From: Mustelus asterias
Taxonomy: Eukaryota
Length of the DNA stretch: 64,000 bases
Direction: 5' to 3'
Assembly (NCBI RefSeq): GCF_964213995.1
Contig: NW_027590155.1
Coordinates: 620,001 to 684,000 of the forward strand
The position numbers and the translations under genes are program-made. The notes beneath the pieces are model-generated. The model was not told the origin of the DNA and did no database searches. It saw only the letters and a program-made list of their open reading frames with translations. Below are positions 751-64,000 of the stretch, in pieces; within the stretch, counting starts at the first letter, position 1; each line of letters opens with the position of its first letter.

Positions 751-864
751 TCAAGCTGTTAGATAATGGAAAAAATATCACATTAGAGGTATACAGTTGT
801 TTTTCAATACCAAATCATATATCCATTAAACCAGATCTATCATTTGTTTCTCTTATTTTGGCAG

Positions 865-7588: not shown

Positions 7589-7589
7589 A

Positions 7590-13836: not shown

Positions 13837-14194
13837 TGCCCATTGCACAGCGGGAACAGGCGGATGCCACGATTCTCTCTGTCTTTCCTCTGGATGACCA
13901 GAGGTGCAGAAAATAATACAACTCAAACATTAGGCTGCAAACGGCAAGAACCATAAGTACAACTGCAGAGTCCAAAAGCAGAAAGAAAGGCACATTCTGG
14001 GCTGTTTCGACGGTTTCAGGACATGGAAATTGATCTGTTCTTCTGTGTGCTGTAGATTTGAACCTAACGGCTCAGCGCTGAAAGAGTTAATCGAAAAGTG
14101 AGCATGCGATGAGCAGGAGCTACTGTAAGTGCTTCAGTGCAAGGGAGCCCCATCAGTAAGACCAGAACCTTGCAGTCATGGAGTATAGTGAGGA

Positions 14195-14950
14195 ATCTCT
14201 CTCACTCTCTCTCTCAAGCACACATACTCTCACACACGCACATACACACACTCAAACAAACACGCACACAGAAAAACGCACACTCAGACATGCACACACA
14301 CTCAGGTAAACGCGCACACATACTCAGACAATCAGAAACAAACACACATACAAACACGCACCCAAACGCTCAGACAAATACACGCACACAAACACACACC
14401 CATAGGCATACACACACACTCAGACAAAAATGCAAACTCTCTTAGACAAAAGCTGACACACACACAATCACAGACGTAGACAAAGACACACAGATTACCT
14501 CAGGCAAAATGACACACACACATATATACACGCACACACACAGATACATACATGCACACAAGCACATGCATAGATACTCACACTGTCAGATAAACACACA
14601 CACAGGCGCACACACACACACACATTGACAAGCAAACATAAACACACACTCTCAGACAACACAAAGATACACACACTCAAACAAGCACATAGAAACACAC
14701 ACACTCTCATAGAGCAGACACAAATGCTCAGACAAACTCAGACACACATACACACACGCTGCCTTTCAGCTAAATACACACACTCAGACACACACAAACA
14801 GAATCTCAGAAATCATACACACGGATACACCCACACAGAGCCCCAGACAGACACACACATGCAGTATCAAAAGAACATGCAGAGAAAGATATACACTGTT
14901 GCTCAGGGAAAACAAAAAAACATACACAGACCCACACACACAGAAACAGA
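14195..14950. repeat. Degenerate (CA)n-rich low-complexity tract
   Basis: Long AC-rich sequence; its ORFs are T/H-rich artefacts. Confidence 0.9.
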
Positions 14951-15294
14951 AAAAATAGAAACCGGAAAAGGCCTTTCGGCCTTTCGAGCCTTCTTCGCCA
15001 CTCATTATGATCATGGATGATCGTCAAATTGAATATCCTGATCGTGCCTTCCCTCCAAATCCCTTGCTCCCTTTTGCCCCAAGAGCTATATCTAATTTCT
15101 TCTTGAAATCCTGCAACGTGTTGGTCATAATCACTTCCTGTGGTAGTGAATTCCACAGATTCACCACTGTCTGGGTGATGAAGTTTCTCTTCACCTCAGT
15201 TCTAAAGGTTTTACCCCTTATCCTCAGACTATGACCCCCTAGTTCTGGACTCCCCAGCCTTCTGGGATAATCTTTCTGAATTTACCCTGTCTAA

Positions 15295-19589: not shown

Positions 19590-21090
19590 CACACACACAC
19601 ACAATGCGAGACCAACACACGCACACACACACACATTCAGAAAAACACACTGAGACAAGCAGACACAAGCAAACTCGCAAACGTACACACACAAACAGAC
19701 AAATGGACGGCACCGTAGCGTAGTGGTTAGCACTGCTGCTTCACAGCTCCAGGGACCTGGGTTCGATTCCCAGCTTGGGTCACTGTCTGTGTGGAGTTTG
19801 CACATTCTCCTTGTATCTGCGTGGGTTTCCTCCGGGTGCTCCGGTTTCCTCCCACAGTCCAAAGATATGCGGGTTAGGTTAATTGGCCATGCTAAAAATT
19901 GCCCCTTAGTATCCTGAGATGCGTAGATTAGAGGGATTAGCGGGTAAAATATGTAGGGATGTGGGGGTAGGGCCTGGGTGGGATTGTGTTCGGTGCAGAC
20001 TCGATGGGCCGAATGGCCTCTTTCTGTACTGAAGGGTTTCTATGATTTCTAGGAAACAGTCACGAGCACACACACACAGAAACACACACACAGGATCTCA
20101 CAAAAATCGATACAGGCAAACTCGCACACACAGGCCCATACACAGATATACTCGCTCAGACAAACACACGCACGCACCCACAGGCACACACATACTTTCT
20201 CTCTCTTTCAGACACACAGACACGCTGTCAGACAAATACATGCACACACACACACAGACACAAACACACACACGCATTTAGAAAAGTACAGAAAACATAC
20301 ACGCAAACACACAGGCAAATGCAGGCACACTTATTTCTGAGACGAACAGACACAGGAAAACTCGCAAACACAGAGAAACGCTCAGAAAAACACAGGCACA
20401 CACACACTCACAGACAAAGATACAATCACAAGAACACACTCAGACAAACACACACAAGCAAACTCTTGCACACAGCCATATACAGAGAAAAATTCAGACA
20501 AAGAAAACATACATTCTCAGACATGCATGCACACACACAGACACACTCGCTGGCAAATATACACACACAGACCCACACACAGCTGTACTATCAAACGAAC
20601 ACACAGGCACACACATACAAATTCACTCTGACGCAAACACACAGATACACACAATCTCTCAGACAAAACACACACACTTAGAGACAAACACATAAGCACT
20701 CAGTCAAACACTCAGGCATACATACAATCACAGAAAAACACGTAGGCACCAACACACACACACAAACACCCAGGCAAACACAGTCACGCACACAGAAACA
20801 CACGCACACAGTCCAACATCGGCACACATATGATCTCAGTCAAGCAACATAGGCAAGGTTGTAAACTCACAGACACGCACTTTCAGCATAATACACACAC
20901 ATACACACACATGAACAGACAATCAAACAGACACAAGCACACGCACACACACACACACGGACTCAGGCAAAAACAGTCACACAATCTCAGAGAAATAGAC
21001 ACAAGCAAAGTCGCACATACGGACACATACTAATAAATACTCAGACAAAAGCAAACATACACACACTCTCAGATAAACACAGAGACAAAC
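19590..21090. repeat. Degenerate (CA)n-rich tract containing an HE1-like SINE (~19705-20050, +)
   Basis: AC-rich sequence; the embedded SINE is nearly identical to the 13505 copy. Confidence 0.85.
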
Positions 21091-21618
21091 CAAAAAAAAT
21101 CAGGATGGCGTCGGACCATAGCGACTTATTGCATGCTGTGCCCCGCATCTCTCTGATGTTATCTTTTACTCTCGGTCTTTGCTTCTAAAACTCTATTCTA
21201 ATTCTTTTGAAATCTATAACAATGTTTTAATTAAATTGATCTTTCTCTACACCCTAGCTATGACTGTAACATTACATTCTGCAATCTCTCATTTCCTTCT
21301 CTATGTGCGTGTAATGCCGTGTTTGTGAAACCTACCTTTCCACTCACGTAATGAAGGAGCAGCGCTCCGAAAGCTCGTGATTCCAAATAAACCTTAACCT
21401 GGCGTTTTGAGCCTTCTTACTGTTCTCTATGTGCGGTATGCTTTGTTTGTATAGCGCGCAAGAAACAATACTTTTCACTGTATACTAATACACATGACAA
21501 TAATAAATCAAATACAACAAAATCAAAAACATATACTCTCAGAAGAACACACAGAGACACACACACACAGACATACACACTATTCCGGACAGTCTCACAA
21601 ACACAGAGACAGAGATCA

Positions 21619-29450: not shown

Positions 29451-30507
29451 ATGCGGCTCCCCGTTTTCACTCTGATCTGGGTGACATTCATTGTTGGTAA
29501 GGTTAACACTTTAAAAATGAGTTATTTTCTGGAGGAATAAAGTTGAAAAGCAGGACATTCGTGTTATACAGGTATTGGACATGCCGTAGAACACAAATGA
29601 ATTCCTGCGAGTGGTTTTAGTCTTTTGAAAATAGATTTGAAAAGCACACTGAAAAGGCGATTTCGAGAAATGGTACTCGGATTGGGAGGTGAGAGCTATC
29701 AGAATGCAAGATTATGATTACTTTCTCGACTGACCAAAGAAACTAACGCAAACCTGACTGATCTATTTATAATGATAACGAGGATTGGTGTGGTGCACGG
29801 GGAGAGGATGATTCCACTTGTGGGAGAATTCCAAATATATGTCCCACAATTCCAATGAAACAAAGAGATCAACTGGGAATCGGAGAGAAACAGCTTTAGA
29901 AAGAGTTGGATAGAATGTGACTCATGTTAACACAATGAACACTTGAGGAGAGGAGCAAAGACTAATTTAAAGGTAAACTAAACTAAACAGCTGAGGAAGA
30001 AAGGGACAACTGCATTGAGAAGAGGCGAGAGGGAGAAATCTCCAGGGGATTGTAAACGGGAACATAGATCAGTTGGAGAGAATGTGGTATGATTCAATAC
30101 ATTCAATACATATTTTTACGTTACACTGTCAGTGAATTTTCTCCCTTAGTTCAATTGAACTTTTAATCAATGTTTTCTTCCTTTCTTTAACCGTGTGTTT
30201 CAGATCTGAGCGATGGAGATTCTGTTACTCAGCGGGAATCCTCACTCACACGGACAGAGGGAGAAGATGTCACTTTAAACTGCACCTTTACCGACGATGC
30301 TTATTATTTATTTTGGTATCGTCAATACCCAGGCAGACAGCCCGAGTTTGTAGTCCGGAGAGACAAGAACGGCGGTTTTGAATTAAAGGCGGATTTCGCT
30401 CGGACCCGGTTTTCTGATTCAGTCCAGCAGTCAGACAATTTGTACCGAGTGACTATTTCGGAGTTGCGGCTGTCTGACACTGCGGTCTATTACTGTGCAC
30501 AGAGACT
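29451..30507 (+). CDS. Intact TCR Valpha/delta gene segment (leader exon 29451-29496, V exon 30204-30507)
   Basis: Spliced ORF MRLPVFTLIWVTFIV/DLSDGDSVTQRESSLTRTEGEDVTLNCTFTDDAYYLFWYRQYPGRQPEFVVRRDKNGGFELKADFARTRFSDSVQQSDNLYRVTISELRLSDTAVYYCAQR. Phase-1 GT-AG intron, both Cys and WYRQ present. The ORF track misses it. Confidence 0.95.
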
Positions 30508-30546
30508 CACAGTGATGAGAACGAGTGAAATCCTCGTACAAAAACT
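30508..30546 (+). other. 23-RSS of the intact TCR V
   Basis: CACAGTG (30508-30514), 23-nt spacer, ACAAAAACT (30538-30546). Confidence 0.95.
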
Positions 30547-31912: not shown

Positions 31913-32389
31913 GGTTTTTGTACGGATTAACTGTGACTCTGTAACTGCGGTTCAGCGCACACTGTTACAGATACACGGCAGAGTCAGAGACACGGACCCC
32001 GGTGATATTTAATGGAGCTGTTTTCTTGTCTCTGTCCAAATTAGCAGAAAACTGGTCCGAAAAATCAGGAGACTTATCCCCCTTCCCCTGGCCGTAACTT
32101 TTCAATAAATATCTCGGAGCTTCTCCGGGATACAGGATGTACCAGAATAGAGTTTGGTCAACGTACTTAGCTTTATAACTGCAGTTCAAAATTACCGTCT
32201 GTACTTCCTGAACCGTTAATTCAGGCGGCTCCTGGGAAACTGAAGTTTGGCCATTGGTTCCTGTAACAACATATAGACTGTGTGAGAAATCTGTGAGTGA
32301 ATATAACCCATTGAACACACACTGAGGATTTGAGCTCAGACTCACGGGGCAGCATGTCCATTATCATCAGTAGAACACGCAGGGAACAT
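31913..32389 (-). pseudogene. TCR Valpha/delta pseudogene (leader 32389-32346, V exon 32260-31950, defective RSS)
   Basis: QTSVSQEPPELTVQEVQTVILNCSY...LFWYILYPGEAPRYLL...SDSAVYL*QCAL has an in-frame TAA before the second Cys. The leader exon is 44 nt (frameshifted). RSS is CGCAGTT-21-ACAAAAACC. Confidence 0.9.
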
Positions 32390-33314: not shown

Positions 33315-33663
33315 AGTTTTTGTACGAAGCCCGCGGGATCCTCATTCAGTGTGGGTCTCAGTGCACAGTAATACACGGCGTTATCTGTCATCTTCAAATC
33401 TTTCATGGACAAGTGAAAAGTGCTTTGTGTCTCGCTGAGATTCCAGCTGAAATGTTTAAAGCCGGGAGCCGTATCGGTAAATCCATAACTCTCGGCTCTG
33501 AGCAGATACTGAGGAGCTCGGTGTGGATACTGGCGATACCAGAACAGGACATAGACTGTAGGTAAACCCTATACAGAGTAACTGCAGGGTATTGCTGAAT
33601 CTTCACCCTCTGCTGCTTCAACTCCTGGTTCTGACTGGGACACTGAGTCACCGTTACTCATGT
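33315..33663 (-). pseudogene. TCR Valpha/delta pseudogene with intact 23-RSS
   Basis: DSVSQSEPGVEAAEGEDSAIPCSYSV*GLPTVYVLFWYRQYPHRAPQYLL...TDNAVYYCALRP has a single TAG (33569-33571). RSS is CACACTG-23-ACAAAAACT (33353-33315). A degenerate leader candidate lies at ~34065-34118. Confidence 0.9.
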
Positions 33664-39595: not shown

Positions 39596-42066
39596 GAAAA
39601 AATAGGGTTGTTGTAGTGGGGGACTTTAATTTCCCTGGCACAGACTGGAAAGTGGTGAGAGCTGGGGGTCCGGACGGGGAGGAATTTGTAAAATGCGTGC
39701 TGGAAGGTTCTTTGGAACAGTATGTAAGATAGCCCGACTAGAGAGGGGGCTATACTGGACCGAGTTCTGGGAAATGAGCCCGGTCAGGTCGTCAAAGTTT
39801 CGGTAGGGGAATATGTGGCAAATAGTGACCACAACTCTGTTAACTTTAGGATAGTAATGGACAAGGATGAGTGCTGTCCTACGGGCAGGGTGCTAAATTG
39901 GGGGAAGGCTAACTATAGCCGGATTAGGCAGGAATTGGTGGATGTTGATTGGGAGAGGATGTTCGAGGGTGAGTCCGCTTCTGGCATGTGGGAGTCTTTT
40001 AAGGAAGTATTGATAAGGCTGCACGATAGGCATGTGCCTGTAAAAAGGAAAGATAGGAAAGGTAGGATTCGAGAGCCGTGGATAACCAGGGAAATTGAGG
40101 ATCTGATTAAAATGAAAAGGGAGGCGTACGTTAAGTCCAGGCAACAGAAAACAGATGGAGCTCTGGAGGAATACAGAGAGAGTAGGAAAGAACTCAAACG
40201 GGGAGTTAGAAGGGCAAAAGGAGGTCACGAGATGTTCTTGGCAGGCAGGATTAAGGAGAATCCTAAGGCATTCTATTCATACGTTAGGAACAAAAGAGTT
40301 GTCAGGGAGAAAATCGGACCTCTCAGGGACAAAGGAGGGGAATTATGCTTAGAACCCAAGGGAATAGGGGAGATCCTAAATGAATACTTTGCATCGGAGA
40401 GGGGTGTGTTAACCGGGAGTGTCTCGGAGGATGGTGTTGACCCGTTAGAGAAAATCTCCATTACAAGAGAGCAAGTGTTAGGTTTTTTAGGGAACATTAA
40501 AACTGACAAAGCCCCAGGGCCTGATGGCATCTATCCTCGACTGCTCAAGGAGACGAGAGATGAAATTGCTGGGCCTCTGACGGAAATCTTTGTCACTTCT
40601 TTGGACACGGGTGAGGTCTCTGAGGATTGGAGGATAGCGAATGTGGTCCCGTTGTTTAAGAACGGTAGCAGGGATAACCCAGGAAATTATAGGCCGGTGA
40701 GCTTGACGTCCGTGGTAGGGAAGTTGTTGGAAATGATTCTTAGAGACAGGGTGTATGTGCATTTAGAACGGAACAATCTCATTCGTGACAGACAGCATGG
40801 TTTTGTAAGAGGGAGGTCGTGCCTTACAAATTTGGTGGAGTTTTTTGAGGAAGTGACAAAAACGGTTGATGAAGGAAGGGCCGTGGATGTCGTCTATATG
40901 GATTTCAGTAAGGCATTTGACAAAGTCCCACATGGCAGGTTGGTTAAGAAGGTTAAGGCTCATGGGATACAAGCAGAAGTGGCTAGATGGGTGGAGAACT
41001 GGTTTGGCCATAGGAGACAGAGGGTAGTGGTCGAAGGGTCTTTTTCCGGCTGGAGGTCTGTGACCAGCGGTGTTCCGCAGGGCTCTGTACTGGGACCTCT
41101 GCTATTTGTGATATATATAAATGATTTGGAAGAAGGTGTAACTGGTGTAATCAGCAAGTTTGCGGATGACACGAAGATGGCTGGACTTGCGGATAGCGAA
41201 GAGCATTGTCGGGCAATACAGCAGGATATAGATAGGCTGGAAAATTGGGCGGAGAGATGGCAGATGGAGTTTAATCTGGATGAATGCGAAGTGATGCATT
41301 TTGGAAGAAATAATGAAGGGAGGAGTTATACAATAAATGGCAGAGTCATCAGGAGTATAGAAACACAGAGGGACCTAGGTGTGCAAGTCCACAAATCCTT
41401 GAAGGTGGCAACATAGGTGGAGAAGGTGGTGAAGAAGGCATATGGTATGCTTGCCTTTATACGACGAGGTATAGAGTATAAAAGCTGGAGTCTGATGATG
41501 CAGCTGTATAGAACGCTGGTTAGGCCACATTTGGAGTACTGCGTCCAGTTCTGGTCGCCGCACTACCAGAAGGACGTGGAGGCGTTAGAGAGAGTGCAGA
41601 GAAGGTTTACCAGGATGTTGCCTGGTATGGAGGGTCTTAGCAATGAGGAGTGATTGGGTAAACTGGGGTTGTTCTCCCTGGAAAGACGGAGAATGAGGGG
41701 AGACCTAATAGAGGTGTACAAGATTATGAAGGGGATAGATAGGATGAACGGTGGGAAGCTTTTTCCCAGATCAGAAGTGACGTTCACGAGGGGTCACGGG
41801 CTCAAGGTGAGAGGGGCGAAGTATAACTCAGATATTAGAGGGATGTTTTTTACACAGAGGGTGGTGGGGGCCTGGAATGCGCTGCCAAGTACGGTGGTGG
41901 AGGCAGGCATGCTGACATCGTTTAAGACTTATCTGGATATTCACATGAGCAGCCTGGGAATGGAGGGATGCAAACGATTGGTCTAGTTGGACCAAGGAGC
42001 GGCACAGGCTTGGAGGGCCGAAGGGCCTGTTTCCTGTGCTGTACTGTTCTTTGTTCTTTGTTCTTT
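39596..42066 (+). mobile_element. CR1 LINE, 5' truncated, few stops
   Basis: 533-aa RT ORF plus continuation; (TTCTTTG)n tail. Confidence 0.95.
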
Positions 42067-42149
42067 GGAATGGCGGGTGCTCTAATTGGACAAAGGGAAT
42101 ACAAATGAGGATAAAGACGGCTGAGAGAGATGCTAGAAATATCCATTAA

Positions 42150-43075
42150 GCGATCAGAATAGCAGAGCAGAGGTAAAGGTGGTTAAGGCAGTTGCCCTAA
42201 AAGAGGAGTGGGGGCGGGGGGAGTTGGGGGGAGGGGCAAGAAGGAGAGCAGGAATGAAGAGGTGGAAAAATGGAAGTGAGAAAGAAGTATGATAAAAATG
42301 GGTGAATGAGATGAAAAGAAGAAACAGAATGAAATAAAATAAATGGAAAGTGGATAAAAGTGGAGGGGAGAGTTCATGCTCTGAAGTTGTTGAACTCAAT
42401 GTTTTGGCCGGAAGGCTGTAAAGTGTTCAATCAAAAGATGAGGCACTGTTCCTCCAGCTTGCGTTGGGGTTCACTCGAACATTGCAAAATGCCAAGGACG
42501 GACATGTGGACAGGAGAGCAGGGTGGGGTGTTGAAGTGGCAAGAACTGGAAGTTCTGGGTCCTGCTTGCAGACGGACTGAAGGTGTTCAGCAAAGTGATC
42601 ATCCAGTTTGTGTTTGGTTTCTCCAATGTAGTAGAGTAGACTTCATTGGGAGGAGCGAATGCAAAAGACCAGATTGAAGGAGATGCATGTGAAGCGCTGC
42701 TTCACCTGAAAGGGGTGTTTGGGACCTGGGATGCTGAGCAGGGAGGAGGTAAAGGGACAGGTGTTGCACCTTCTACCATTGCACGGGAAGATGCTGTGGG
42801 CATGGGATGGGATGTTGGGTGGGATGGAGGCGTGGACCAGCGTGTCCCAGAGAGAACTTTCCTTGTGGAATGCTGATGGGTGTGGGGGGTGAGGTAATGA
42901 TGTGTTGCGGAGTGGCTTCATACTGGAGTTGGCAGCAATGGCGGAGGATGATACTTTGAACACAGAGGCTGGTCTGGTAAAAAGTGAGGACAAGCGGAAC
43001 CCTGTCCTCTTTCTGGGAGGGAGGGGAGGGGGTGCGAGCAGTGGCCTGGGGGATGAGTTGGACACGGCCAAGAGT
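42150..43075 (-). mobile_element. Penelope-like element fragment (RT thumb/linker and GIY-YIG start)
   Basis: KEDRVPLVLTF..., FPCNGRRCNTCP and QRFTCISFNLVFCIRSSQ match the Cys-linker/GIY-YIG region of vertebrate Penelope elements; frameshifted. Confidence 0.75.
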
Positions 43076-43294
43076 CCTGTCAGCCACAGTGGGTGGACTC
43101 CGCACAGGCAGTCATCCAAGGCAAGAATCAAACCCAGGTCCCGAGCAGTGTAAGGCAGCAGCGCTAACCACTGTTCCACCCGGAATGAAAAGTAAAATAT
43201 TGCGGATGTTGGAATTGGGAAATTTAAACTGAAAATACTGGATAAACTCAGCAGACCTGGCGGCATCTGTGGAGAAACCTATTAACAATGGATT

Positions 43295-44618
43295 CTTATG
43301 ATTTTGTGGGCAAAGTTTTGGAAAGTATTATAAGAGATAGGATTTATAATCATCTAGAAAGGAATAATTTGATGAGGGATGATCAACATGGTTTTGTGAA
43401 AGGTAAGTCGTGCCTCACAAAACTTATTGAGTTCTTTGATAAGGTGACCAAAGAGGTGGATGAGGGTAAAGCAGTTGATGTAGTGTATATGGATTTCAGT
43501 AAAGCGTTTCATAAGGTTCCCCACGGTAATCTATTGCAGAAGATACAGAGGCATGGGATTGAGGGTGATTTAGTGGTTTGGATCAGGAATTGGCTAGCTG
43601 TAAGAAAGCAGAGGGTGGTGGTTGATGGGAAATGTTCATCCTGGAGTTCAGTTACTCGTGGTGTACCTCAAGGATCTGTTTGGGGCCACTGCTGTTTGTC
43701 ATTTTTATTATTGACCTGGATGAGGGCGTAAAAGGATGGGTTCGTAAATTTGTGGATAAGGTCGGTGGAGTTGTGGACAGTGCGGAAGGTTGGTTCAGGT
43801 TACAGAGGGTCATAGATAAGCTGCAGTGCTGGGCTGAGAAGTGGCAAATGAAGTTCAATGCGGAAAAGTGTGAGATGATTCACTTTGGAAGGAGTAACAG
43901 GATTACAGAGTACTGGGCTAATGGTAAGATACTTGGTAGTGTGGCTGAACAGAGAGATCTCGATGTCCATGTGCATAGATCCCTGAAAGGTGGCACCCAG
44001 TTTGATAGGGTTGTTAAGAAGGCGTACAGAGTGTTAGCTTTTATTGGTAGAGGAATTGAGTTTCGGAGCCAGGAGGTCATGTTGCAGCTGTACAAAACTC
44101 TGGGGCGGCCGCACTTGGAGTATTGCGTACAGTTCTGGTCACCACATTATCGGAAGATGTGGATGCATTGGAAAGGGTGCCGAGGTTTGGTGGGAAGGTC
44201 TTATGAGGAAAGGCTGAGGGACTTGAGGTTGTTTTCGTTAGAGAGAAGATGGTCAAGAGGAGGCTTAATAGAGGCATATAAGATGATCAGAGGATTAGAT
44301 AGGGTGGATAGTGAGAGCCTTTTTCCTCGGATGGTGATAGCTAGCACGAGGGGACATAGCTTTAAATTGGGGGGTGATAGATATAGGACAGATGTCAGAG
44401 TTATGTTCTTCACTCAAAGAGTGGTAAGGGCGTGGAATGCCCTGCCTGCAACAGTACTGGACTCGCCAACATTAAGGGCATTTAAATGGTCATTGGATAA
44501 ACATATGGATGATATTGGAATAGTGTAGGTTAGATGGGCTTTAGATTGGTTTCTCAGGTCGGCGCAACATCGAGGGCCGAAGGGCCTGTACTCTGCTGTA
44601 ATGTTCTATGTTCTATGA
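43295..44618 (+). mobile_element. CR1 LINE fragment
   Basis: RT ORF pieces and a (TTCTATG)n tail. Confidence 0.9.
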
Positions 44619-49620: not shown

Positions 49621-49856
49621 GTTTACCTCGACTCGATGCACTGGCCAGGCTAAATTTTCCCTCAATGTACCCGAACAGGCGCTGGAGTGTGGCGCCTGGG
49701 GGATTTTCACAGCAACTTCATTGATGTGTGAATGTAAGCCTACTTATAACACGAATAAACAAACTTACAAATTAAAATCTTCCAGCAGATAAGGATAATG
49801 TCATAAATGTTCAGAAAGAAAATAATTATTTTCAACAATGACGATCCAATGACGAT

Positions 49857-52153
49857 ACAGGACAGGCATGTGCCTGTAAAAAAGAAGGATAGGAAGGGTA
49901 GGATTCGAGAACCGTGGATAACCAGGGAAATTGAGGGACTGGTCAAAAAGAAAAGAGATGCGCATGTTAGGTCCAGGCAGCTAAAAACGGAGGGAGCTCT
50001 GGAGGAGTACAAAGAAAGTAGGAAAGAACTCAAACGGGGAATTAGCAGAGCAAAAAGGGGTCACGAAATGTTCTTGGCAGACAGGATTAAGGAGAATCCC
50101 AAGGCATTTTATTCATACATTAGGAACAAAAGGGTTGTCAGGGAAAAGATCGGACCTCTCAGGGACAAAAGTGGGGAATTATGCTTGGAGCCCAAAGAAG
50201 TAGGGGAGATCCTAAATGAATACTTTGCGTCGCTATTCACAAAGGAGAGGGATGTGTTGACTGGGAGTGTCTCGGAGGGGAGTGTTGAACCGTTGGAGAA
50301 AATCTCCATTCCAAAGGAGGAAGTGTTAGGTTTGTTAGAGAATATAAAGACTGACAAATCCCCAGGGCCTGATGGAACCTATCCAAGCCTGCTCAGGGAG
50401 ACGAGAGATGAAATCGCTGGGCCTCTGACGCAAATCTTTGTCTCGTCACTGGATGCAGGTGGGGTCCCAGAGGATTGGAGGATAGCTAATGTGGTCCCGT
50501 TATTTAAGAAGGGTAGGAAGGATAACCCGGGTAATTATAGGTCGGTGAGCTTGACGTCCGTGGTGGGGAAGTTGTCGGAGAAGATTCTTAGAGATAGGAT
50601 GTATGCGCATTTAGAAAGGAATAAACTCATTAACGATAGTCAGCATGGTTTTGTGAGAGGGAGGTCATGCCTCACTAACCTGGTGGAGATTTTTGAAGAA
50701 GTGACCAGAATGGTTGACGAGGGAAGGGCCGTGGATGTCGTCTATATGGACTTTAGTAAAGCGTTTGACAAAATCCCTCATGGTAGGCTGGTGAAAAAGC
50801 TTGGATCTCATGGGATAAAGGGGGAGGTGGCTAGATGGGTGGAGAACTGGCTTGGTCACAGAAGTCATGATGTGGAGATGCCGGCGTTGGACTGGGGTAA
50901 ACACAGTAAGAAGTTTAACAACACCAGTTTAAAGTCCAACAGGTTTATTTGGTAGCAAAAGCCACACAAGCGTTCGGAGCTGCAAGCCCCTTCTTCAGGT
51001 GTGAAGAAGGGGCTTGCAGCTCCGAAAGCTTGTGTGGCTTTTGCTACCAAATAAACCTGTTGGACTTTAACCTGGTGTTGTTAAACTTCTTACTTGGTCA
51101 CAGAAGACAGAGGGTGGTAGTGGAAGGGTCTTTTTCCGGCTGGAGGCCTGTGACTAGTGGTGTTCCACAGGGCTCTGTATTGGGACCTCTGCTGTTTGTG
51201 ATTTATATAAATGATCTGGAAGAAGGTGTAACTGGGGTGATCAGTAAGTTTGCGGACGACACAAAATTGGCAGGACTTGCAGATAGTGAGGAGCATTGTC
51301 AGAGGCTACAGAAGGATATAGATAGGCTGGAAATTTGGGCAAAGTAATGGCAGATGGAGTTCAATCCTGATGAATGCGAAGTGATGCATTTTGGTAGAAA
51401 TAATGTAGGGAGGAGCTATACGATAAATGGCAGAACCATAAAGGGTGTAGATACGCAGAGGGACCTGGGTGTGCAAGTCCACAGATCCTTGAAGGTGACG
51501 TCACAGGTGGAGAAGGTGGTGAAGAAGGCATGTGGCATGCTTGCCTTTATAGGACGGGGCATAGAGTATAAAAGTTGGGGTCTGATGTTGCAGATGCATA
51601 GAACGTTGGTTCGGCCGCATTTGGAATACTGCGTCCAGTTCTGGTCGCCACACTACCAGAAGGACGTGGAGGCTTTGGAGAGAGTACAGAGGAGGTTTAC
51701 CAGGATGTTGCCTGGTATGGAGGGGCTTAGTTATGAGGAGAGATTGGGTAAACTGGGGTTGTTCTCCCTGGAAAGACGGAGGATGAGGGGAGACTTAATA
51801 GAGGTGTATAAAATTATGAACGGCATAGATAGGGTGAACGGTGGGAAGCTTTTCCCCAGGTCGGTGGTGACGTTCATGAGGGGTCATAGGTTCAAGGTGA
51901 AGGGGGGGAGGTTTAACAGAGATATCAGAAGGACATATTTTACACAGAGGGTGGTGGGGGCCTGGAATGCGCTGCCAGGCAACGTGGTGGAGGCGGACAC
52001 ACTGGGAACGTTTGAGACTTATCGAGACAGCCATATGAACGGAGTGGGAATGGAGGGATACAAAAGAATGGTCTAGTTTGGACCAGGGAGCGGCGCGGGC
52101 TTGGAGGGCCGAAGGGCCTGTTCCTGTGCTGTATTGTTCTTTGTTCTTTGTTG
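49857..52153 (+). mobile_element. CR1 LINE (same subfamily as 2826-7588) interrupted by a Penelope-type insert
   Basis: RT ORFs 49807-50955 and 50949-52076; (TTCTTTG)n tail. Confidence 0.95.
50865..51092. mobile_element. Penelope-type palindromic insert with hammerhead motif
   Basis: 14-bp target-site duplication CTTGGTCACAGAAG (50851-50864 / 51093-51106); inverted repeat centred at ~51000; same family as 33810-34029. Confidence 0.85.
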
Positions 52154-55100: not shown

Positions 55101-56190
55101 CTGAAAATTCTGTATCGCATTTAAACAGCAGCGTCTCTTGTACGTGATTAATACCCTATTCTATTGTACAGTATAATCTGATTTCCATTATTGAAGGGTT
55201 CCTCTCATAGCTGCCAATGAGTGGAGAAATGATCAGGTCATAACCTGATTCAATGGAAGATAAAACATTTATTCTTGTAATTTTGTGTAATGTGCCGCAA
55301 AGTCCTGATATCCTGTGTTCCCAACACCAGTGAATGTTCGACAGCTGGTGGCCAATAGAGTGAGCTGCAATGATTTGGATGCTGAAGGAGAACTTTAATG
55401 ATCTCCGTGTCCGTTCCATTAATTAACTTCTCTGTCAAAATTCGATTTAAGTTTATGTCTCTCTGTCAACTCACTATTCGATTATCCGGAGGGCGGGATT
55501 CTTATTATTTTCAAAGGGCTGTCTTCGAGATTGTGCAGTTTGACAAATAGAAGGAGAAAAACTGTATTGTGTGAGAGTTTCTTCTCATCTCCAATCCCAA
55601 ATTATCCAGTGATAGCCATCCACACTGTAAATAGAATCACTTTGTTCATCCCCCACGTTTAGTAACAGAAATCGATAACAATTATTCTGATAAATTATGC
55701 TTTATTATTATAATGTGACAGAGACCAGGGATTGTTGCAAAATAGACTGATTGTCTCTTTATTTTCCGAAAATGTTATTTCATCATTTTCAGATGTATGT
55801 TCTTGTTAGGGGCGTGGTAATAAAAGCACCATACTTACAATGGAATTCGTTTTTTCTTTTAAATAAAGGATGATGAACTGCAATATCACCATCAGAAATA
55901 ATGGAGACAATATAATGAACATATTCAGCCAAACAAATATCCCGACACAAATAAAATGCCAATTTTAATATTAACCTACTGTAAATCTCGGAGTCCATTC
56001 TGTTGGGGTGTGGAAGGTGGGACGAATCCAGTCGCCGCCTCCAGCAGGGAATCAACAGGCGGCGCCTCGAAAGCCGCACCCTGCTGCCGGGTATTTAAAT
56101 GCCGCTCAGTGGGACCGGAATCCAACAGTCTAGGAGCTGGTTTGTTCACTGAGTTCCTGACACAACCATTTCCCCCAATTTACCAGAAGG

Positions 56191-56661
56191 ATGAGGTCGG
56201 CGATTTCTCTCAGTTTGTTGCTGACTTTCTTATCCGGTGAGTAGTTTTTATTGTCCAAGTCTCTAACTGTTAGTGTTCGTCTATCTCTGGAATATTCCAG
56301 AGTCAGCAATCACTTCACCAGAATTAATCCTCGGCGTTTTTAATCTATTTTTACAGGTGTCTAGATGCAGGTCGTGTTGACTCAGTCAGAGGCAGAGACC
56401 GGACGTCCGGGAGGCTCCCTGAAACTGACCTGTAAAACCAGCGGCTTCAGCCTTGGTAGCGCTTACATACGGTGGATCCGACAGGTTCCCGGACAGGGTC
56501 TGGAGTGGCTGCTTCAGTACGACGGTTCATCCAGCAACTACTACGCGCCTGGAATTCAAAATCGATGTACTCCGTCGAAAGACACTTCTAACAGCATCTT
56601 CGCTTTGGAAATTACTAACCTGAAGGCTGAAGACACCGCCATCTATTACTGTTCAAGACAC
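56191..56661 (+). pseudogene. IGHV: IgM-type VH segment (leader 56191-56236, V exon 56357-56661) with a nonsense codon in the leader
   Basis: [69 protein letters not shown]...[10 protein letters not shown] has a shark IgM VH-type framework. TAG is at 56362-56364; TATA-like TATTTAAAT at ~56092. Confidence 0.92.
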
Positions 56662-56700
56662 CACAGCGAGAGGAACCAGGGCTGCACCCGAACAAGAACA
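56662..56700 (+). other. 23-RSS of the VH
   Basis: CACAGCG (56662-56668), 23-nt spacer, ACAAGAACA (56692-56700). Confidence 0.9.
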
Positions 56701-57025
56701 GCTCCGGAGGGAATGCAACAGCTTCCAGCGTAACCTGAAGGTCAGTACTTGTTTTAAATGTGATATTAATAGCAGAGTTCATAACCGGCCCACAAACCTA
56801 AGAGAACGAAACTGCAACACAAAACCTAACAAGCATACCCATGTAATTGGATGTGGTATTTTCTCTGTATATACTTTTAAAAGTTTCAGCAACGACAGAC
56901 CTGAATATAACGCTCGTTTTAATGTATCTGACACTTTGGATAAGGTTGTGTTCATTGTATTTTGAAAAAGTACTGCATATATTCTAAACTGGTTCGGAAG
57001 TAAATGTGTTCTGGAGAGTGAGTGC

Positions 57026-57053
57026 AGTTTTTGTGCGGGTATGTGTTACTGTG
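57026..57053 (+). other. 12-RSS facing the VH
   Basis: AGTTTTTGT (57026-57034), 12-nt spacer GCGGGTATGTGT, TACTGTG (57047-57053). Confidence 0.92.
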
Positions 57054-57109
57054 ATACATCAGTGGTACTGGGTACTGGGGACAAGGTACCATGGTGACGG
57101 TGACTGCAG
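57054..57109 (+). CDS. IGHJ: Pre-joined IgH D(-D)-J block
   Basis: a-TAC ATC AGT GGT ACT GGG TAC TGG GGA CAA GGT ACC ATG GTG ACG GTG ACT GCA G|GTAAG = YISGTGYWGQGTMVTVTA, with a WGxG JH motif and phase-1 donor. There is no RSS between the D-like and J parts. Confidence 0.88.
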
Positions 57110-57589
57110 GTAAGAACCATGTAATTATTTAGTAACTGTTTTACTTGAGTTTTTGTTTTATATTTTTTTATGGATTTTACTAATTTGTTCAATGCAATGA
57201 GGTTTGCTGGATTCTGTGCTGAAAATCTTCACAATGTTTCATGTGATTCTGCTTAAAATGGGGTTATGAAATTCTACTGTTAATTGACAAAAGGTGATGC
57301 TGAGTGATTCAGTCCCTGGTAGTTGTATTTTGGTGTTGATCTGCCAAGACATTATGTGGCTGGGTTACTTTGAATGCCCAACTTCTGGTTACCAGTCCGG
57401 CGTTTCTGCAATGCTTAAACTCGGGGACATCTAGTGGCTGCGGGTTGTACCATCCAATGCACACGCATTTGAAATTTAACCCAATACTAACAAAATGGGT
57501 TAAACTTTCTGTATTAATTTAGTGATCATGTTCCGCTTAGTCAAAATGCTGGTGTTGTTATGACATATTTCTGTTCATTTTAATTATTG

Positions 57590-60500
57590 ATTAGTTTGGT
57601 GGTCGTCGGATTGGCTGGATTTTAAATTGAGATTTTCTTGCAATGCTACATTTGATTCTGTTGGAAGTGTTTGTGGAATTGAACTACTTCTGCATGAAAC
57701 AGGGTTAGTCCCTCAGTGATGTGAATCTCTGGTGAGGAGATTGTGTGTCTGGGTGAGTTCCAGTAAGTAAAATTTGTGAAATAGTTCGGCGATTCTGCAT
57801 TGTTTAAACTCGGCGACACTGAGCTGTTACACGCGTTGTGATTTAATACAGTCTCCGGGCGTTAAACTGCTTGACGCATGATTGCAGACAGAAATCAGGC
57901 AGGCTTTATTCAATTTGTATTTTTGTTTCAATCTTAAATGATAATTGCAGGTTAAACTAAACCACGGTTTACTCCGTTCAGAACAAATCTTGCCACTGCA
58001 ATCACGATTTGGGATACATGCAATGTTTAACCTCGGTGGCATATGATGGCTGCAGCTTTTACCATCCAAATGTTTAAATATGTTTACTTCTGTTTGAAAT
58101 ATGACCCAATATGAAAAAAAATTGATAAAGTTTCAACATTAATTGGTTGGACATGCTCCACCTCCTCGCAATGCTATTGCTATTATTCCAGATTTCTGTT
58201 CAGTTTAATAATTCATACATTTGGTCAGGAGCTGGTTTGCTGGATGCGTTATTGAGATTTTCTTGCAATGTTACATTTAATTCTGTTGAATGTGGAATTG
58301 AGCTGCTTCTCCGTGAAATGGAGTCACTCGCTCAGTGATGTGCATTGGTGTATTTCTGTTGAGGAGATTCTGTGGCGAGGTCAAGATGAATGTTTAAATG
58401 TGTGAAATGGTTTGGCGTTTCGGCAATGTTTCTGCATTGTTTGAACTCGGTGGCATTGAGCGGTTACACGTTTCCTGGCTGAATACAAACTATGAGTTTG
58501 ACAATCCTTGCAGGGAGAATACAGGCAGGTTTGGGAAAAATAAAATAAAGATATTACAGCATTGTTATACATTTTAAATAACACTTACAAATTAAAATAA
58601 ATCACGGCTTACAACGCTCATTCGGACACTAAGTCATTGCTGCAATCATAAGCTTCTCATTAACAAGTTTGATAGTTTGAGAGTAAAATTAATGTAAATC
58701 AAGCAATTATTAATCGGTAATATAACTCCATAGTGACACCAAAGATTATTTTACATTAATATAATTGAGCATTAATCACCGTTAATAGTTCTGCTGTGCT
58801 ACGCACTCAATTAACATGACCAGAAAAGTTTCGTGAATATTTTGTGAAATTCCAGAAACAGTTTCAATGGTGACGTGCTGTTTCCAAAGCAGCGTTCAGT
58901 TTAACAAGATATTTTGCATTAATCGTTACCTCCCTGATTAAGTCCGCATTCACTGGAATACGAGTTTTGGGGAATAAGACATTGCTATTTGGCAATTTAT
59001 GTATGCAGTTTTCACATTCTTCCTGTGCAGGCGCAACCAGATTATTCCTTCCAAGCAATTTGTATTTGGATATCGAGATAATTAATCACTAATCTAATCT
59101 TAAAATTTGTGAAATGGTTTGGCGTTTTTCAATTGTTTCTGTATTTTTTAAATCTCAGTGATACTGAGCGGTTACATGTTTTCTGGCTAAATGAATAAAG
59201 AAACTGCCTTTGAAAATTCTTGTCGGGATAAAACAAACAGGTTTCAGAAAAATAAAATAAATATATGTTAGAGCATTTTCTTCATGTTAACTGATGCTTA
59301 CATGTTAAAATAAAATATGAATTACAATTCTTACTGTGACACTGTATCGCTGTTAGGGGCATTACACTGCCCTGAATCTGTTATATTTGATGCGCTCATT
59401 TTCAGAAAAATTACATTTTTGCCCAGTTTTCCAGATTTGCGACAGACAGGGAGAGATAGTTAAAAGTCGAAGGGAGTTTTGAAATTAATATGTTCAATTT
59501 AAAATGAGTTATTGTTTTTTGTCGTTGTAATTTGACCATTGAGCAATTAAAATCAAAGAGGTTGAATAAATTTGACAGATTGAACAGAGTTATCTGACAG
59601 ATGGAATTCACTACCACTCAAGTAATTGTTCATATAATCGTGTTTGAATTGTCGTAAGGTGTGACCAGAAACTGGCTAGAGATTGAGAAGTTAATACTTG
59701 AAATTCAAAAAGATTAATTTGTATAAAAATATTATATTTATATTATAAGTATTATAAAAATAACGTTTGCTCTGCACTTAATAATAGCATCCTGTCTCCC
59801 ATTACTGCTGAGCACAGGATAGAACAATGTGTTGCACAAATGACAGAATAGAATAATTGATCCTATATTAACCTGATGTTTAATTCTTATCAATATTATA
59901 CTGAAGAAAATGTCTGGACTTGTATTGTGCATCATGTTTCAGTGTTGCAGAGGATTTGAATCAATTGTCCTCATTGTGTTTTGCACTACTTAATTCAGAT
60001 CTTCTTTAATTAAACAAATAATTAAGCAGTTAAATTATATGGATGGTCTAAATTATTAATTCTCGGAAGCAGTTTTATAGATTTCAAAATGTCAGGCCGT
60101 TATAGGAAATACGAATTCAGAAGCATGCATTTTTGACGCATTTGTAGGTTATAATAAGGCATTTGGAGTAAAAGTGAAAAAGTAAAATTTTACAATGTGA
60201 TTAGATTTAAGCAAATGAATTACATGTGTCTGAACCTTTCCAGTCAATAATTTGATGTTATTGTTTAACAGTGTTTGAGTTTTAATTGGAACGTAATTAT
60301 TTAACAATGATAGAGGCAGAATCAAGTTTTGAATGATTGAAAATTGATTTTATTACAGAGTACAAATCAGCTAACAGGAGAACTAACTGGCAATTAACAA
60401 TAAGTTAAAATATAATATTGGTGCTAAATAATTCAGAACAAAAGGCCTTGAATAGTGCACTGGCGTGCAAAATATCATCTGTTTTAGAGAATATTTAATT

Positions 60501-60930
60501 GTATCAAAATTAATTCAGAAGCAAAACATTTTTTACCCTGCTGTGCCCAGCTCGTTAAGCTGTTTTGCCTCGAATATTTTGTTGATTATGATTAATTAAG
60601 AAATTCGATTGAAACAGGTAATGATTTTGAATGTAAATGTTTCTTGGTTCTTTTAATTGTGACTGTGTCACTGCATCTCTGTTAGGGACATTGAACTATC
60701 CTGAATCTGTTATTCGTGATGTGCTCATTTTCAGTGAAATTACATTTTTACATAGTTTTTGAGAATTAGACAGAAAGAGAGAAATAGTTAAAAGTCGAAG
60801 GGAGTTTTGAATGAATATCAGATTAATTTCAAAGAGGTTATTGATTTTCTGTTGTTGTAAGTTGATTAACTTACGATCAGAATCCAACAGTTTGAATGAA
60901 ATTGACAGATTGAACAGATCTATCTGCTGG
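57590..60930. repeat. Internal duplications in the AT-rich J-C intron
   Basis: ~57600-57830, ~58215-58600 and ~59100-59320 are related; ~59335-59610 and ~60660-60930 are related. Confidence 0.75.
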
Positions 60931-62092
60931 GAACTCGATTGTTGCATCGTTTGTGCTTGTTCTGTTTCTGTGGGCGTGGTGCCATGTTGGGACCAGGAAT
61001 CTGCCTAACTCGTTATAAACTTTCTGGTTCCTTCTCCTGTATTTCAGGGAGTGAAATTTGATTTATTTCTTCAATAAACTTGTATCTTTTTGGAATGTGA
61101 CAGGTTGACTTGGTGTTTGACTCGGCGTCTCACAGATGAGATCCCTAAAGCACATTGTGACCGTTAGAGAGAGCAGAACCGTCAGACTGTAGAGGGAGAT
61201 TTGGTTGATTTTTAACCAGTGATGTACCGGCCTTGGGAAGTTTCGATGAGCAAATGCAAAGGGAGATTTACTATATTGTGCTCCATACTCTAGCAGTCCC
61301 TGACCTGTTCAGTAGGACAGTTCGAGGGTCAAACACGTTTGTATCTTATTTTTAATTTCTAAAGGCAATTTAGAGTCGCTTGCCAAACCGGAATTTTAAA
61401 TCTGTCCCTAATTGTTCCTTGGGAAAGAATTGACATGAATTATCCTTGAATAACTGCAGTCCATATGGTGAAGGCATCTGCCGAGCTGTTACGTAGGGAG
61501 TTCCAGGATTTTGACCCAGCGACTGTGAAGGAACTGAGATATTGTTTCAAGTCAGGGTGGTGTGTGTCTTGGAGGGGAGCTTGCAGGTTGTAGTGTTCCT
61601 ATGCGCTGTTCTCGTTGCCCTGTTAGGATGTAAAGGCAGAGGGTTTAGACAATGCTTTCAAGGGAGTCTTGCTGAGTTGCTGCAGTGCATCTTCTATATG
61701 ATACACACTGCTGTCACTGCTTGTTCGTGATGGACAGAGGGAATGCGGTAAATGAGGGGCAGGTAATCTTGTGGGTCGCTTTGTCCTGGATTCTGTCGAA
61801 TTTCTTGAGGTTTTTACAAGTTTCCCTGATTGAGGCAAATGGAAATTATTCAATTAAGACTGATTTGTGAAAGATTTAAATTCTTGTCCGTCTTGTGTTC
61901 GCTTGTCACTGACTGTGAGAGTGGATGAGGATGTGTGTGGAGTGTGTGGTTGATATTAGAAACTGAATCAGTCAGATAGAGACTTAAATACATCAGACCT
62001 CTCACACATATAAATACACAAATGCACATTCTCATATTCTCTCACACATGCGCGCGTGCGCACACGCACATACACACAGACATATACAGATA

Positions 62093-64000
62093 CATAGAAC
62101 ATAGAACATAGAACAGTACAGCACAGAACAGGCCCTTCGGCCCACGATGTTGTGCCGAGCTTTATCTGAAACCAAGATCAAGCTATCCCACTCCCTATCA
62201 TCCTGGTGTGCGCCATGTGCCTATCCAATAACCGCTTAAATGTTCCTAAAGTGTCTGACTCCACTATCACTGCAGGCAGTCCATTCCACACCCCAACCAC
62301 TCTCTGCGTAAAGAACCTACCTCTGATATCCTTCCTGTATCTCCCACCACGAACCCTATAGTTATGCCCCCTTGTAATAGCTCCATCCACCCGAGGAAAT
62401 AGTATTTAAACGTTCACTCTATCTATCCCCTTCATCATTTTAGAAACCTCTATTAAGTCTCCCCTCAGCCTCCTCCGCTCCAGAGAGAACAGCCCGAGCT
62501 CCCTCAACCTTTCCTCATAAGACGTACCCTCCAAACCAGGCAGCATCCTGATAAATCTCCTCTGCACTCTTTCCAGCGCTTCCACATCCTTCTTATAGTG
62601 AGGTGACCAGAACTGCACACAATATTCCAAATGTGGTCTCACCAAGGTCCTGTACAGTTGCAGCATAACCCCACGGCTCTTAAACTCCAACCCCCTGTTC
62701 ATAAAAGCTAACACACTATAGGCCTTCTTCACAGCTCTATCCACTTGAGTGGCAACCTTTAGGGATCTGTGGATATGAACCCCAAGATCTCTCTGTTCCT
62801 CCACAGTCTTCAGAACCCTACCTTTGACCCTGTAATCCACATTTAAATTAGTCCTACCAAAATGAAACACCTCACATTTATCAGGGTTAAACTCCATTTG
62901 CCATTTTTCAGCCCAGCTTTGCATCCTATCTATGTCTCTTTGCAGCCTACAACAGCCCTCCACCTCATCCACTACTGCACCAATCTTGGTGTCATCAGCA
63001 AATTTACTGATCCACCCTTCAGCCCCCTCCTCTAAGTCATTAATAAAAATCACAAAGAGCAGAGGACCAAGCACTGATCCCTGCGGCACTCCGCGAGCAA
63101 CCTGCCTCCAATCCGAAAATTTTCCATCGACCACCACCCTCTGTCTTCGATCAGACAGCCAGTTACCTACCCAATCGGCCAACTTTCCCTCTATCCCACA
63201 CCTCCTCACTTTCATCATCAGCCGACCATGGGGGACCTTCTCAAACACCTTACTAAAATCCATGTATATGACATCAACTGCCCTACCTTCATCAACACAC
63301 TGAGTTACATCCTCAAAAAATTCTATCAAATTTGTGAGGCACGACTTGCCCTTCACGAATCCGTGCTGACTATCCCGGATTAATCCGCATCTTTCTAAAT
63401 GGTCGGAAATCCCATCTCTAAGGACCTTGTCCATCAATTTACCAACCACCGAAGTAAGACTAACCGGTCTATAATTACCAGGGTCATTTCTATTCCCTTT
63501 CTTAAACAGAGGAACAACATTCGCCATTCTCCAGTCTTCTGGCACCATCCCCGTGGAGAGTAAGGACCCAAAGATCAAAGCCAAAGGCTCTGCAATCTCA
63601 TCCCTTGCCTCCCAAAGAATCCTAGGATACATTTCATCAGGCCCAGGGGACTTATCGACCTTCAGTTTATTCAAAACTGCCAGTACATCCTCCCTCCAAA
63701 CATCTATTTCCTCCAGCCTATTAGCCTGTAACACCTTCTCTTCCTCAAAAACATGGCCCCTCTCCTTGGTGAACACTGAAGAAAAGTATTCATTCATCAC
63801 CTCGCCTATCTCTACTGACTCCATACGCAAGTTCCCACTACTGTCCTTGACCGGCCCTAACCTCACCCTGGTCATTCTTTTATTCCTCACATAAGAGTAA
63901 AAAGCCTTGGGGTTTTCCTTGATCCGACCCGCCAAGGACTTCTCGTGTCCCCTCCTAGCTCTCCTAAGCCCCTTTTTCAGCTCATTCCTTGCTAACTTGT
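62093..64000 (-). mobile_element. CR1 LINE (runs off the window edge)
   Basis: 509-aa RT ORF 62406-63935; (ATAGAAC)n tail at ~62093-62113. Confidence 0.95.

What the first reader, a model, noticed from the sequence alone, without database searches (positions are those of the whole stretch)
57026..57115. Pre-joined D-D-JH with an unjoined V (V-DDJ configuration)
Seen: 325 bp after the VH nonamer, where D1 is expected, a 12-RSS leads straight into D-like ATACATCAGTGG, D-like TACTGGG and a 5'-trimmed JH (no YFDY-type start). The block is in one open frame with no internal RSSs, and GGTACTGGG repeats across the junction. Established: shark IgM clusters are V-D1-D2-J with separate RSS-flanked segments, and JH carries a long-spacer RSS. 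The germline-joined forms I know of mostly join from the V side (VD-, VDD-J, VDDJ). Inference: a RAG product fixed in the germline that converts the heavy-chain cluster into a one-step V-J system with a fixed CDR3 3' half, effectively a new 12-RSS J usable by any 23-RSS V.
Basis: partly seen in the sequence, partly recalled or inferred. Interest (0 to 1): 0.9.

Follow-up and report, generated by a model that had tools for sequence, protein, structure and literature searches.

The report
Shark antibody cluster with pre-joined D-J
A decayed shark antibody heavy-chain mini-gene has its D and J pieces already fused in this assembly, a small variant of the known pre-joined shark antibody genes, but other DNA samples of the species hold an unfused or differently fused version.

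Summary
The sequence features are real. A VH segment with a 23-RSS is followed 325 bp later by a good 12-RSS. That RSS runs straight into a 56-nt open block, YISGTGYWGQGTMVTVTA, and a splice donor.

Contigs of near copies confirm that its parts are D-like and J-like.

Three points change the reading:
- **The V is broken.** It has an in-frame TAG in the leader, also present in an independent run.
- **D1+D2 is probably not a separate event at this locus.** A deep run of the same organism has the whole 20-nt D block contiguous at this locus. Unchecked first-stage notes describe many clusters with one long D. Only a D-to-J deletion of at most 432 nt would then be special.
- **The join is not uniform.** One contig leaves the window exactly at the D end and runs on for 432 unlike letters. 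Another bridges the join with two extra letters.

"Fixed in the germline" and "working one-step cassette" are therefore not supported. Most likely this is a germline RAG-type D-J join in a dead IgM-type cluster, with an unjoined allele or recent duplicate still present. A somatic origin is not excluded. Partly joined shark IgH genes are long known.

The parts
56191..56236 (+). Leader exon 1 of the VH gene (MRSAISLSLLLTFLS plus the first base of a split codon), donor GT at 56237
   Evidence: The first 11 residues, MRSAISLSLLL, are identical to the leader of Heterodontus HV01.
56357..56661 (+). V exon (end of leader plus VH, V-set domain) with an in-frame TAG at 56362-56364 where relatives have the Q of VQS
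   Evidence: One search gives V*MQVVLTQ...YYCSRH. Pfam V-set scores E 1.8e-14. It is 70% identical to the Heterodontus Ig heavy chain V region. The X1 contig 56281-56444 has 1 other letter; I take it to be the listed 56366 T>C, which leaves the TAG.
56662..56700 (+). V 23-RSS: heptamer CACAGCG, 23-nt spacer, nonamer ACAAGAACA
56701..57025 (+). V-D spacer of 325 nt, with no RSS-grade heptamer inside
   Evidence: The X1 contig fits 56660-57073 with 1 mismatch.
57026..57053 (+). 12-RSS on the 5' side of the D: nonamer AGTTTTTGT, 12-nt spacer, heptamer TACTGTG
   Evidence: The same RSS is conserved in a near copy from 57014 on (X3 loose ends).
57054..57073 (+). D-derived 20 nt. 57054-57065 is the D1-like ATACATCAGTGG and 57066-57073 is the D2-like TACTGGGT. 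The T at 57073 could also come from J.
   Evidence: A near copy reads ATACATCAGTGG+GT+CACAGTG. The X1 counterpart matches through 57073 and then diverges.
57074..57109 (+). JH-derived part (...WGQGTMVTVTA), lacking the first 11-12 nt of the J seen in other clusters
   Evidence: loose ends before 57073 in X1 and X4 (heptamer plus 11 J letters, then a match to the window). The bin 57015-57115 has multi-copy depth of 1313 in X1. One search finds the only exact WGQG-type J motif in the window here.
57110..57115 (+). Splice donor GTAAGA of the J
57116..62170 (+). Presumed J-C intron. It holds no Ig constant exon and carries degenerate direct repeats spaced about 620-710 nt (57.4-59.3 kb) and about 1330 nt (59.3-60.9 kb). 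A retroelement ORF on the minus strand follows from 62178.

Best explanation
This is an IgM-type heavy-chain mini-cluster lying beside TCR-type V segments. Its V gene is dead because of a stop codon in the signal peptide. The cluster's single long D is a D1+D2-like 20-mer with a 12-RSS on its 5' side. In this assembly that D is fused to JH by loss of at most 432 bp (the D 3' RSS, the D-J spacer, the J RSS and 11-12 nt of J).

The edges and the lack of homology-driven loss fit a RAG cut with end-joining. This is the ordinary D-to-J step, here present in assembled genomic DNA. Most likely it is a germline event, like the other partly joined IgH genes of cartilaginous fish. It is young or local, because a near-identical counterpart (an allele or a recent duplicate) that is not joined to J still exists in the species.

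By its RSSs the unit could still accept a 23-RSS V. With its own V it cannot make a heavy chain.

- Shown: the anatomy, the leader stop, the unjoined counterpart and a second junction form.
- Inferred: RAG as the agent, germ-line timing and lack of function.
For: **Anatomy and 12/23 layout**
- Established.

**D identity**
- An X3 contig of a near copy has the same 12-RSS and the first 12 D letters, then GT and a CACAGTG heptamer.

**J identity and trimming**
- Contigs in X1 and X4 run heptamer, 11 J letters, then match the window from 57073.

**Unjoined counterpart**
- X1 record 4 is 846 nt at depth 42.
- It fits 56660-57073 with 1 mismatch and then continues for 432 unlike letters.
- It is the only X1 contig at 56729.
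- 432 nt lies within the 250-500 bp quoted for segment spacing in shark clusters (passage).

**Not a repeat-mediated deletion**
- Both TACTGGG copies are retained.

**The join is seen in a second DNA sample**
- X4 record 22 bridges 56867-57096 with no base mismatch.

**V is defective**
-, and the same TAG in X1.

**Literature**
- Partly and fully joined IgH clusters, attributed to RAG in germ cells, are established (passages read).
- IgH clusters beside the TCR alpha/delta locus are described (passages read).

**First-stage notes (unchecked)**
- They report one-long-D clusters and other D(D)J-joined clusters in this genome.
Against: - No read-level data from a named non-lymphoid tissue were seen. 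All four runs laid were contigs of unknown library kind, and their tissue and their relation to the assembled animal are unknown.
- The X4 junction differs from the window's by two letters exactly at the D|J border. That looks like an independent joining event, which is more expected of somatic than of germline joining.
- In X1 no contig with the window's junction was listed. However, contigs drop minor paths, and 349 pieces and 52 loose ends were not shown.
- The 432 letters of the X1 contig were not shown. That they begin with a 12-RSS heptamer is therefore inferred.
- V-DDJ is a frequent somatic intermediate in nurse shark thymocytes.
- The three junction-spanning ORFs are not in the 15-billion protein collection. 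That is uninformative rather than contrary.
Confidence: 0.6

Rival explanations
1. Somatic D-to-J rearrangement captured by the assembly. The germline of the species is V-D-J at this locus, and the joined forms (window, X4) come from lymphocyte-rich DNA in which this cluster, sitting in the open TCR alpha/delta neighbourhood, is often partly rearranged.
For: - An unjoined form dominates in the deep run X1, and two different junctions exist (window and X4).
- V-DDJ is a described somatic intermediate. It is prominent for one nurse-shark gene group, and IgH loci are heavily rearranged in thymus (passages).
- Many partial joins are reported across this assembly (unchecked notes).
Against: - Somatic junctions are diverse and each is rare, so an assembler consensus or a contig at full local depth (X4 record 22: 3.6 of 3.6 at the junction) would need a near-clonal population.
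- The window differs from X1 at about 8 sites in about 2 kb around the join. It is therefore another haplotype or copy, not simply the X1 sequence minus a deletion.
- Partly joined germline IgH genes are common in sharks.
Confidence: 0.2
2. This is a germline-fixed, working V-DDJ cassette that turns the cluster into a one-step V-J system, or offers a new 12-RSS 'J' to any 23-RSS V.
For: - Both RSSs look usable, and the block is open in the J frame with a good splice donor.
- An intact co-oriented TCR-type V with a canonical 23-RSS lies 26.5 kb upstream at 30218-30507.
Against: - The cluster's own V has a leader stop codon in two data sets.
- The join is not uniform among DNA samples.
- No C exon lies within 6.9 kb of the J, and a retroelement follows.
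- No RNA holder was found, though that does not show silence.
Confidence: 0.05
3. Non-biological deletion. An assembly or consensus error removed the D-J spacer.
For: - The window's junction was not seen in X1.
- Its letters differ by two from the X4 contig.
Against: - The edges coincide with a D coding end and a point inside J, with no long homology to cause a collapse (only 7-9 nt).
- X4 independently bridges D to J.
Confidence: 0.05

Closest known systems
Germline-joined and partly joined IgH clusters of cartilaginous fish (VD-J, VD-DJ, VDJ; VD and VDD joins)
   Same: Coding segments are fused without RSSs inside an otherwise normal mini-cluster. The fusion is attributed to RAG acting in germ cells, and expression and function are often doubtful (passages read).
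   Different: Here the V side is untouched and only D-J is fused. The reviews I read list VD-DJ but not V-DJ or V-DDJ as a germline form. Germline status is not shown here, and an unjoined counterpart coexists.
Somatic V-DDJ rearrangement intermediate of nurse shark IgH (Malecek et al. 2008, PMC2435157)
   Same: Identical configuration: V still with its 23-RSS, and D1, D2 and J fused behind the D1 12-RSS (passages).
   Different: That form is found in thymocyte and B-cell DNA and is absent from erythrocyte DNA. Here it is in a genome assembly and in a contig of one further DNA run.
DJH intermediate of tetrapod IgH recombination
   Same: A 12-RSS-flanked DJ waits for a 23-RSS V (passage, the figure legend describing D-to-J first).
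   Different: The tetrapod DJ is strictly somatic and lies in a translocon with many V. Here it is in a one-V cluster whose V is a pseudogene.
VH-type segments within or next to the shark TCR alpha/delta locus (TAILV, trans-rearrangement)
   Same: A VH-type gene lies within about 25 kb of TCR-type V segments. The linkage is described in PMC12227049.
   Different: TAILV join to TCR delta D and J. This unit carries its own JH-type J (WGQGTMVTVTA).

Membership tests
Germline-joined Ig gene of cartilaginous fish | Two or more of V, D, J contiguous with no RSS between them, inside a cluster | tested here: met
   Block 57054-57109 has no heptamer-like site. Its D-like and J-like parts were assigned from contigs of near copies.
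Germline-joined Ig gene of cartilaginous fish | The joined form is the state of non-lymphoid or germ-cell DNA of the animal | tested here: inconclusive
   Only contigs of runs of unknown tissue were available.
Germline-joined Ig gene of cartilaginous fish | Stable and widespread in the population (Lee et al. 2000 found this for the joined NS4 genes) | tested here: not met
   Three states were seen: the window, X4 with AT extra, and X1 unjoined. X3 was not informative at the junction. The runs may be individuals, haplotypes or recent duplicates.
Somatic V-DDJ intermediate | V unjoined and D1-D2-J fused behind the D1 12-RSS | tested here: met
   definition.
Somatic V-DDJ intermediate | Present only in lymphocyte DNA, with junctions diverse between cells | not testable with these tools
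   No raw reads and no tissue labels were available. Two junction variants were seen, which is compatible but not decisive.
Functional IgM heavy-chain cluster | Intact leader and V open reading frame | tested here: not met
   TAG at 56362-56364 where relatives have the Q of VQS. Read by hand, the two nearby alternative acceptors put the V out of frame.
Functional IgM heavy-chain cluster | C-mu exons downstream of J | tested here: inconclusive
   I recognised no Ig-like ORF among the 31 ORFs of 45 aa or more listed for 57100-64000, by eye and without a Pfam scan. The window ends 6.9 kb after J. Heterodontus clusters are said to span about 18-20 kb (abstract).
TAILV / VH-delta (VH used with TCR delta) | VH-type V that joins to TCR delta D and J and lacks its own JH | tested here: not met
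   A JH-type J with a splice donor lies 0.4 kb downstream.

The most novel reading that the evidence does not exclude
The joined and unjoined forms are alleles still segregating in the species, and the window and X4 junctions are two separate germline D-to-J events at one locus. That would be a germline V(D)J join caught with its precursor allele at hand. It would be direct evidence that RAG still acts, and acts repeatedly, on Ig clusters in shark germ cells. It would also allow the joint (trimming, P/N letters) to be reconstructed exactly.
Probability: 0.25. Interest if true: 0.6.

Novelty: new variant of a known kind. Interest (0 to 1): 0.3.

Why it matters
Partly joined antibody genes in sharks are the main evidence that the RAG recombinase has acted in germ cells and reshaped antigen-receptor loci. 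A join on the D-J side alone adds one configuration to that list, which is a small point.

The more useful aspect is that a near-identical unjoined counterpart exists. If the two are alleles, precursor and product of a germline join can be compared base by base and followed in families.

As a working immune gene the unit probably does not matter, because its V is a pseudogene.

The case also carries a caution for scans of this assembly. D-J and other partial joins need read-level proof of germline status before they are called new architectures.

Tried and rejected
**Fetching other copies**
- I tried to fetch this locus and unjoined clusters from public assemblies with the look-up of encoding contigs.
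- No D2 of this species could therefore be aligned. The D2 assignment rests on the X1 contig's end point and on unchecked notes.

**Exact look-up of ORFs that span the junction**
- None of the 3 ORFs is in the collection. This is uninformative, because short ORFs on broken contigs are rarely called.

**Naming the TCR-type V at 30218-30505**
- The PDB sequence search was swamped by multi-domain antibodies.
- The homologue search gave 5 hits of 9 candidates, the four NCBI ones named 'hypothetical protein' and one metaclust entry without a name.
- "TCR alpha/delta-type" therefore rests on motifs (FWYRQYPG, YYCA, 23-RSS), on first-stage notes and on PMC12227049.

**Literature limits**
- Hinds-Frey 1993 (PMC2191167) is held only as abstract and references, so horn-shark D and J letters could not be compared.
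- Searches for a described germline V-DJ or V-DDJ found V-DDJ only as a somatic intermediate. That covers only open-access text. Kokubu 1988, Harding 1990 and similar papers were not available.
- Supplements are closed. Figure S1 of PMC2435157 and table S1 of PMC12227049 may bear on junction patterns and on locus maps.

**Readings considered and rejected**
- A plain JH that merely has a 12-RSS: rejected, because the first 12 coding letters and the RSS match an unjoined D of a near copy.
- A deletion between the two TACTGGG repeats: rejected, because both copies remain.
- X1-X4 as RNA: rejected, because upstream non-transcribed parts are covered and the multi-copy to unique depth ratios are alike across runs.
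- Rescue of the leader stop by nearby acceptors: rejected by hand reading.

**Species**
- The species was not identified. The best V hit is 70% to Heterodontus, and the first 11 leader residues are identical to it.

Full report
**What is there**

On the + strand the window holds a VH gene.
- Leader exon: 56191-56236 (MRSAISLSLLLTFLS).
- Intron: 120 nt.
- V exon: 56357-56661. It is a V-set domain (Pfam E 1.8e-14).
- Its best relatives among 17 hits are shark heavy-chain V regions: 70% to Heterodontus HV01 and 68-71% to Chiloscyllium and Scyliorhinus models.

The recombination signals and the joined block are as follows.
- The V ends in a 23-RSS, CACAGCG / 23 / ACAAGAACA, at 56662-56700.
- Exactly 325 nt later comes AGTTTTTGT / 12 / TACTGTG at 57026-57053.
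- This is the only nonamer-12-heptamer match in the window at up to 2 mismatches. The mean over shuffles was 0.19, and 16 of 100 shuffles gave at least one match.
- The heptamer abuts a 56-nt block, 57054-57109. In the J frame it reads YISGTGYWGQGTMVTVTA.
- The block has no heptamer-like site and ends at a GTAAGA donor.
- It holds the only exact WGQG-type J motif in the 64 kb window.

**Assigning the parts**

Public contigs of the same organism, laid on 55500-58500 at 90% likeness, supplied the comparison instead.
- A contig of a near copy in X3 matches the window from 57014 to 57065, which covers the flank, the 12-RSS and ATACATCAGTGG. It then reads GT and CACAGTG. That is an unjoined D1 of 14 nt with its 3' heptamer.
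- Two contigs each in X1 and X4 read a CACTGTG heptamer and 11 J letters, and match the window only from 57073 onward. That is the unjoined J of other clusters. J is multi-copy (depth 1313 against about 50 for unique parts in X1).
- So 57054-57065 is D1-like, 57074-57109 is a J trimmed by 11-12 nt, and TACTGGGT lies in between.

**The V is a pseudogene**

Codon 18 of the leader is TAG (56362-56364), at the place where relatives have the Q of "VQS".
- Read by hand, the two other AG acceptors nearby put the V out of frame.
- An X1 contig at single-copy-like depth (56281-56444, depth 61) has one mismatch, which I take to be the listed 56366 T>C, so it also carries the TAG.
- I recognised no Ig constant exon by eye among the ORFs of 45 aa or more listed for 57100-64000, and a retroelement ORF occupies 62178-63935 on the minus strand.

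**The join is not uniform**

- In X1 (unique depth about 49-58), the only contig over the V-D spacer is 846 nt long at depth 42. It fits 56660-57073 with one mismatch. It then continues for 432 letters that do not fit the window.
- I checked the orientation of minus-strand records against records that run over the stretch ends.
- The contig starts at the multi-copy V end and leaves the window exactly after ...GGTACTGGGT. At 432 nt, the extra piece has the length expected for a D 3' RSS, spacer and J RSS. Segments are quoted as 250-500 bp apart.
- I read it as the same locus, or a very recent duplicate, in V-D-J form with the 20-nt D already in one piece.
- X1 and X3 also differ from the window at 56729, 57125 and 57128, among about 8 sites in about 2 kb.
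- X4 has a 232-nt contig (depth 3.6, no mismatch) that bridges 56867-57096 but has AT added behind 57072. That is a different D|J junction, and it would read ...WDYWGQG.
- The tissue, the library kind and the relation of these runs to the assembled animal are unknown. They are contigs, so minor forms are lost. In addition, 349 pieces and 52 loose ends were not shown.

**Family background in this genome**

These are unchecked AI notes and serve as leads only.
- At least 6 other clusters are described as having one long 12/12-RSS D.
- At least 4 units are described as D(D)J pre-joined.
- Several IgM clusters are described as abutting TCR alpha/delta V arrays.

The X1 contig agrees with the first point for this locus. 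The D1+D2 fusion is then probably a trait of the gene family, and the only event particular to the window is D-to-J.

**Mechanism**

- The missing DNA is bounded on the left by the D coding end and on the right by a point inside J.
- Both TACTGGG copies are kept, so a slip between short repeats is excluded.
- One letter (T at 57073) may be shared, and no extra letters are needed.

This is what a RAG cut at a 12/23 pair followed by end-joining gives. It is inferred, not shown.

Germline joining by RAG is the accepted origin of joined shark Ig genes (Lee et al. 2000, PMC2193156, passages read; reviews). The same V-DDJ layout is also a normal somatic intermediate in nurse shark thymocytes and B cells (Malecek et al. 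2008, PMC2435157, passages).

My weights for the four readings are:
- **About 0.6: germline join with an unjoined allele or recent duplicate still present.** A consensus assembly and a full-depth contig in a second run are hard to get from polyclonal somatic junctions.
- **About 0.2: somatic capture.** The two-junction finding points that way.
- **About 0.05: non-biological deletion.**

**Comparison with what is known**

- It works like the DJ intermediate of any IgH locus.
- As a germline object it would be one more member of the series VD-J, VD-DJ, VDD-J, VDJ.
- In the open literature I could search, V-DDJ appears only as a somatic form. The key older papers and all supplements were not available, so "not described" is a weak statement.
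- IgH clusters lying by the TCR alpha/delta locus are already published (PMC12227049).

**Verdict**

At best this is a new variant of a known kind, in a dead cluster, with germline status unproven. Interest is 0.3. The one angle worth following is that joined and unjoined forms coexist.

Noticed in passing
window 30218-30546 (+): An apparently intact TCR-type V exon (…YLFWYRQYPGRQPEF…AVYYCAQR) with a canonical CACAGTG-23-ACAAAAACT RSS. It is co-oriented with the VH/DJ unit and lies 26.5 kb upstream of it. Best relatives are unnamed Chiloscyllium and Scyliorhinus models at 74-80% identity.
   Followed up: partly
window 33347-33650 (-) and 31965-32345 (-): Two further TCR-type V segments lie on the opposite strand, and both look defective. 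One has a stop in CDR1 (…CSYSV*GLPT…) but keeps a 23-RSS. The other has a stop just before the second Cys region (…AVYL*) and a disturbed RSS.
   Followed up: partly
window 57380-60930 (+): The presumed J-C intron is built of degenerate direct repeats, with units spaced about 620-710 nt (57.4-59.3 kb) and a pair spaced about 1330 nt (59.3-60.9 kb). The shared cores resemble TTCGGCGATTCTGCATTGTTTAAACTCGG. Their function is unknown, and Tandem Repeats Finder did not pick them up.
   Followed up: partly
window 56579-56581: The VH has Cys where relatives have Phe in the conserved RFT(A)SKD motif (NRCTPSKD). This is an extra unpaired cysteine and a further sign of decay.
   Followed up: no
window 1-8000, 15394-17739 (-), 39800-44500, 49800-52100, 62178-63935 (-): Many fragments and one long ORF (781 aa) of reverse-transcriptase-bearing retroelements of one or a few families. 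They account for the strong G-over-C skew blocks in the composition profile.
   Followed up: no
window 14100-15000 and 19600-21600: Long CA/ACAC-rich low-complexity tracts. They produce most of the weak RSS-like hits in the scan and are not recombination signals.
   Followed up: no
window 55900-56130: The region upstream of the VH leader is multi-copy in the public runs (depth 15-35 times the unique parts). All X1 contigs there differ from the window at several sites, so the promoter region is shared among many clusters. Only a one-mismatch octamer (ATGCCAAT at 55956) was found.
   Followed up: partly
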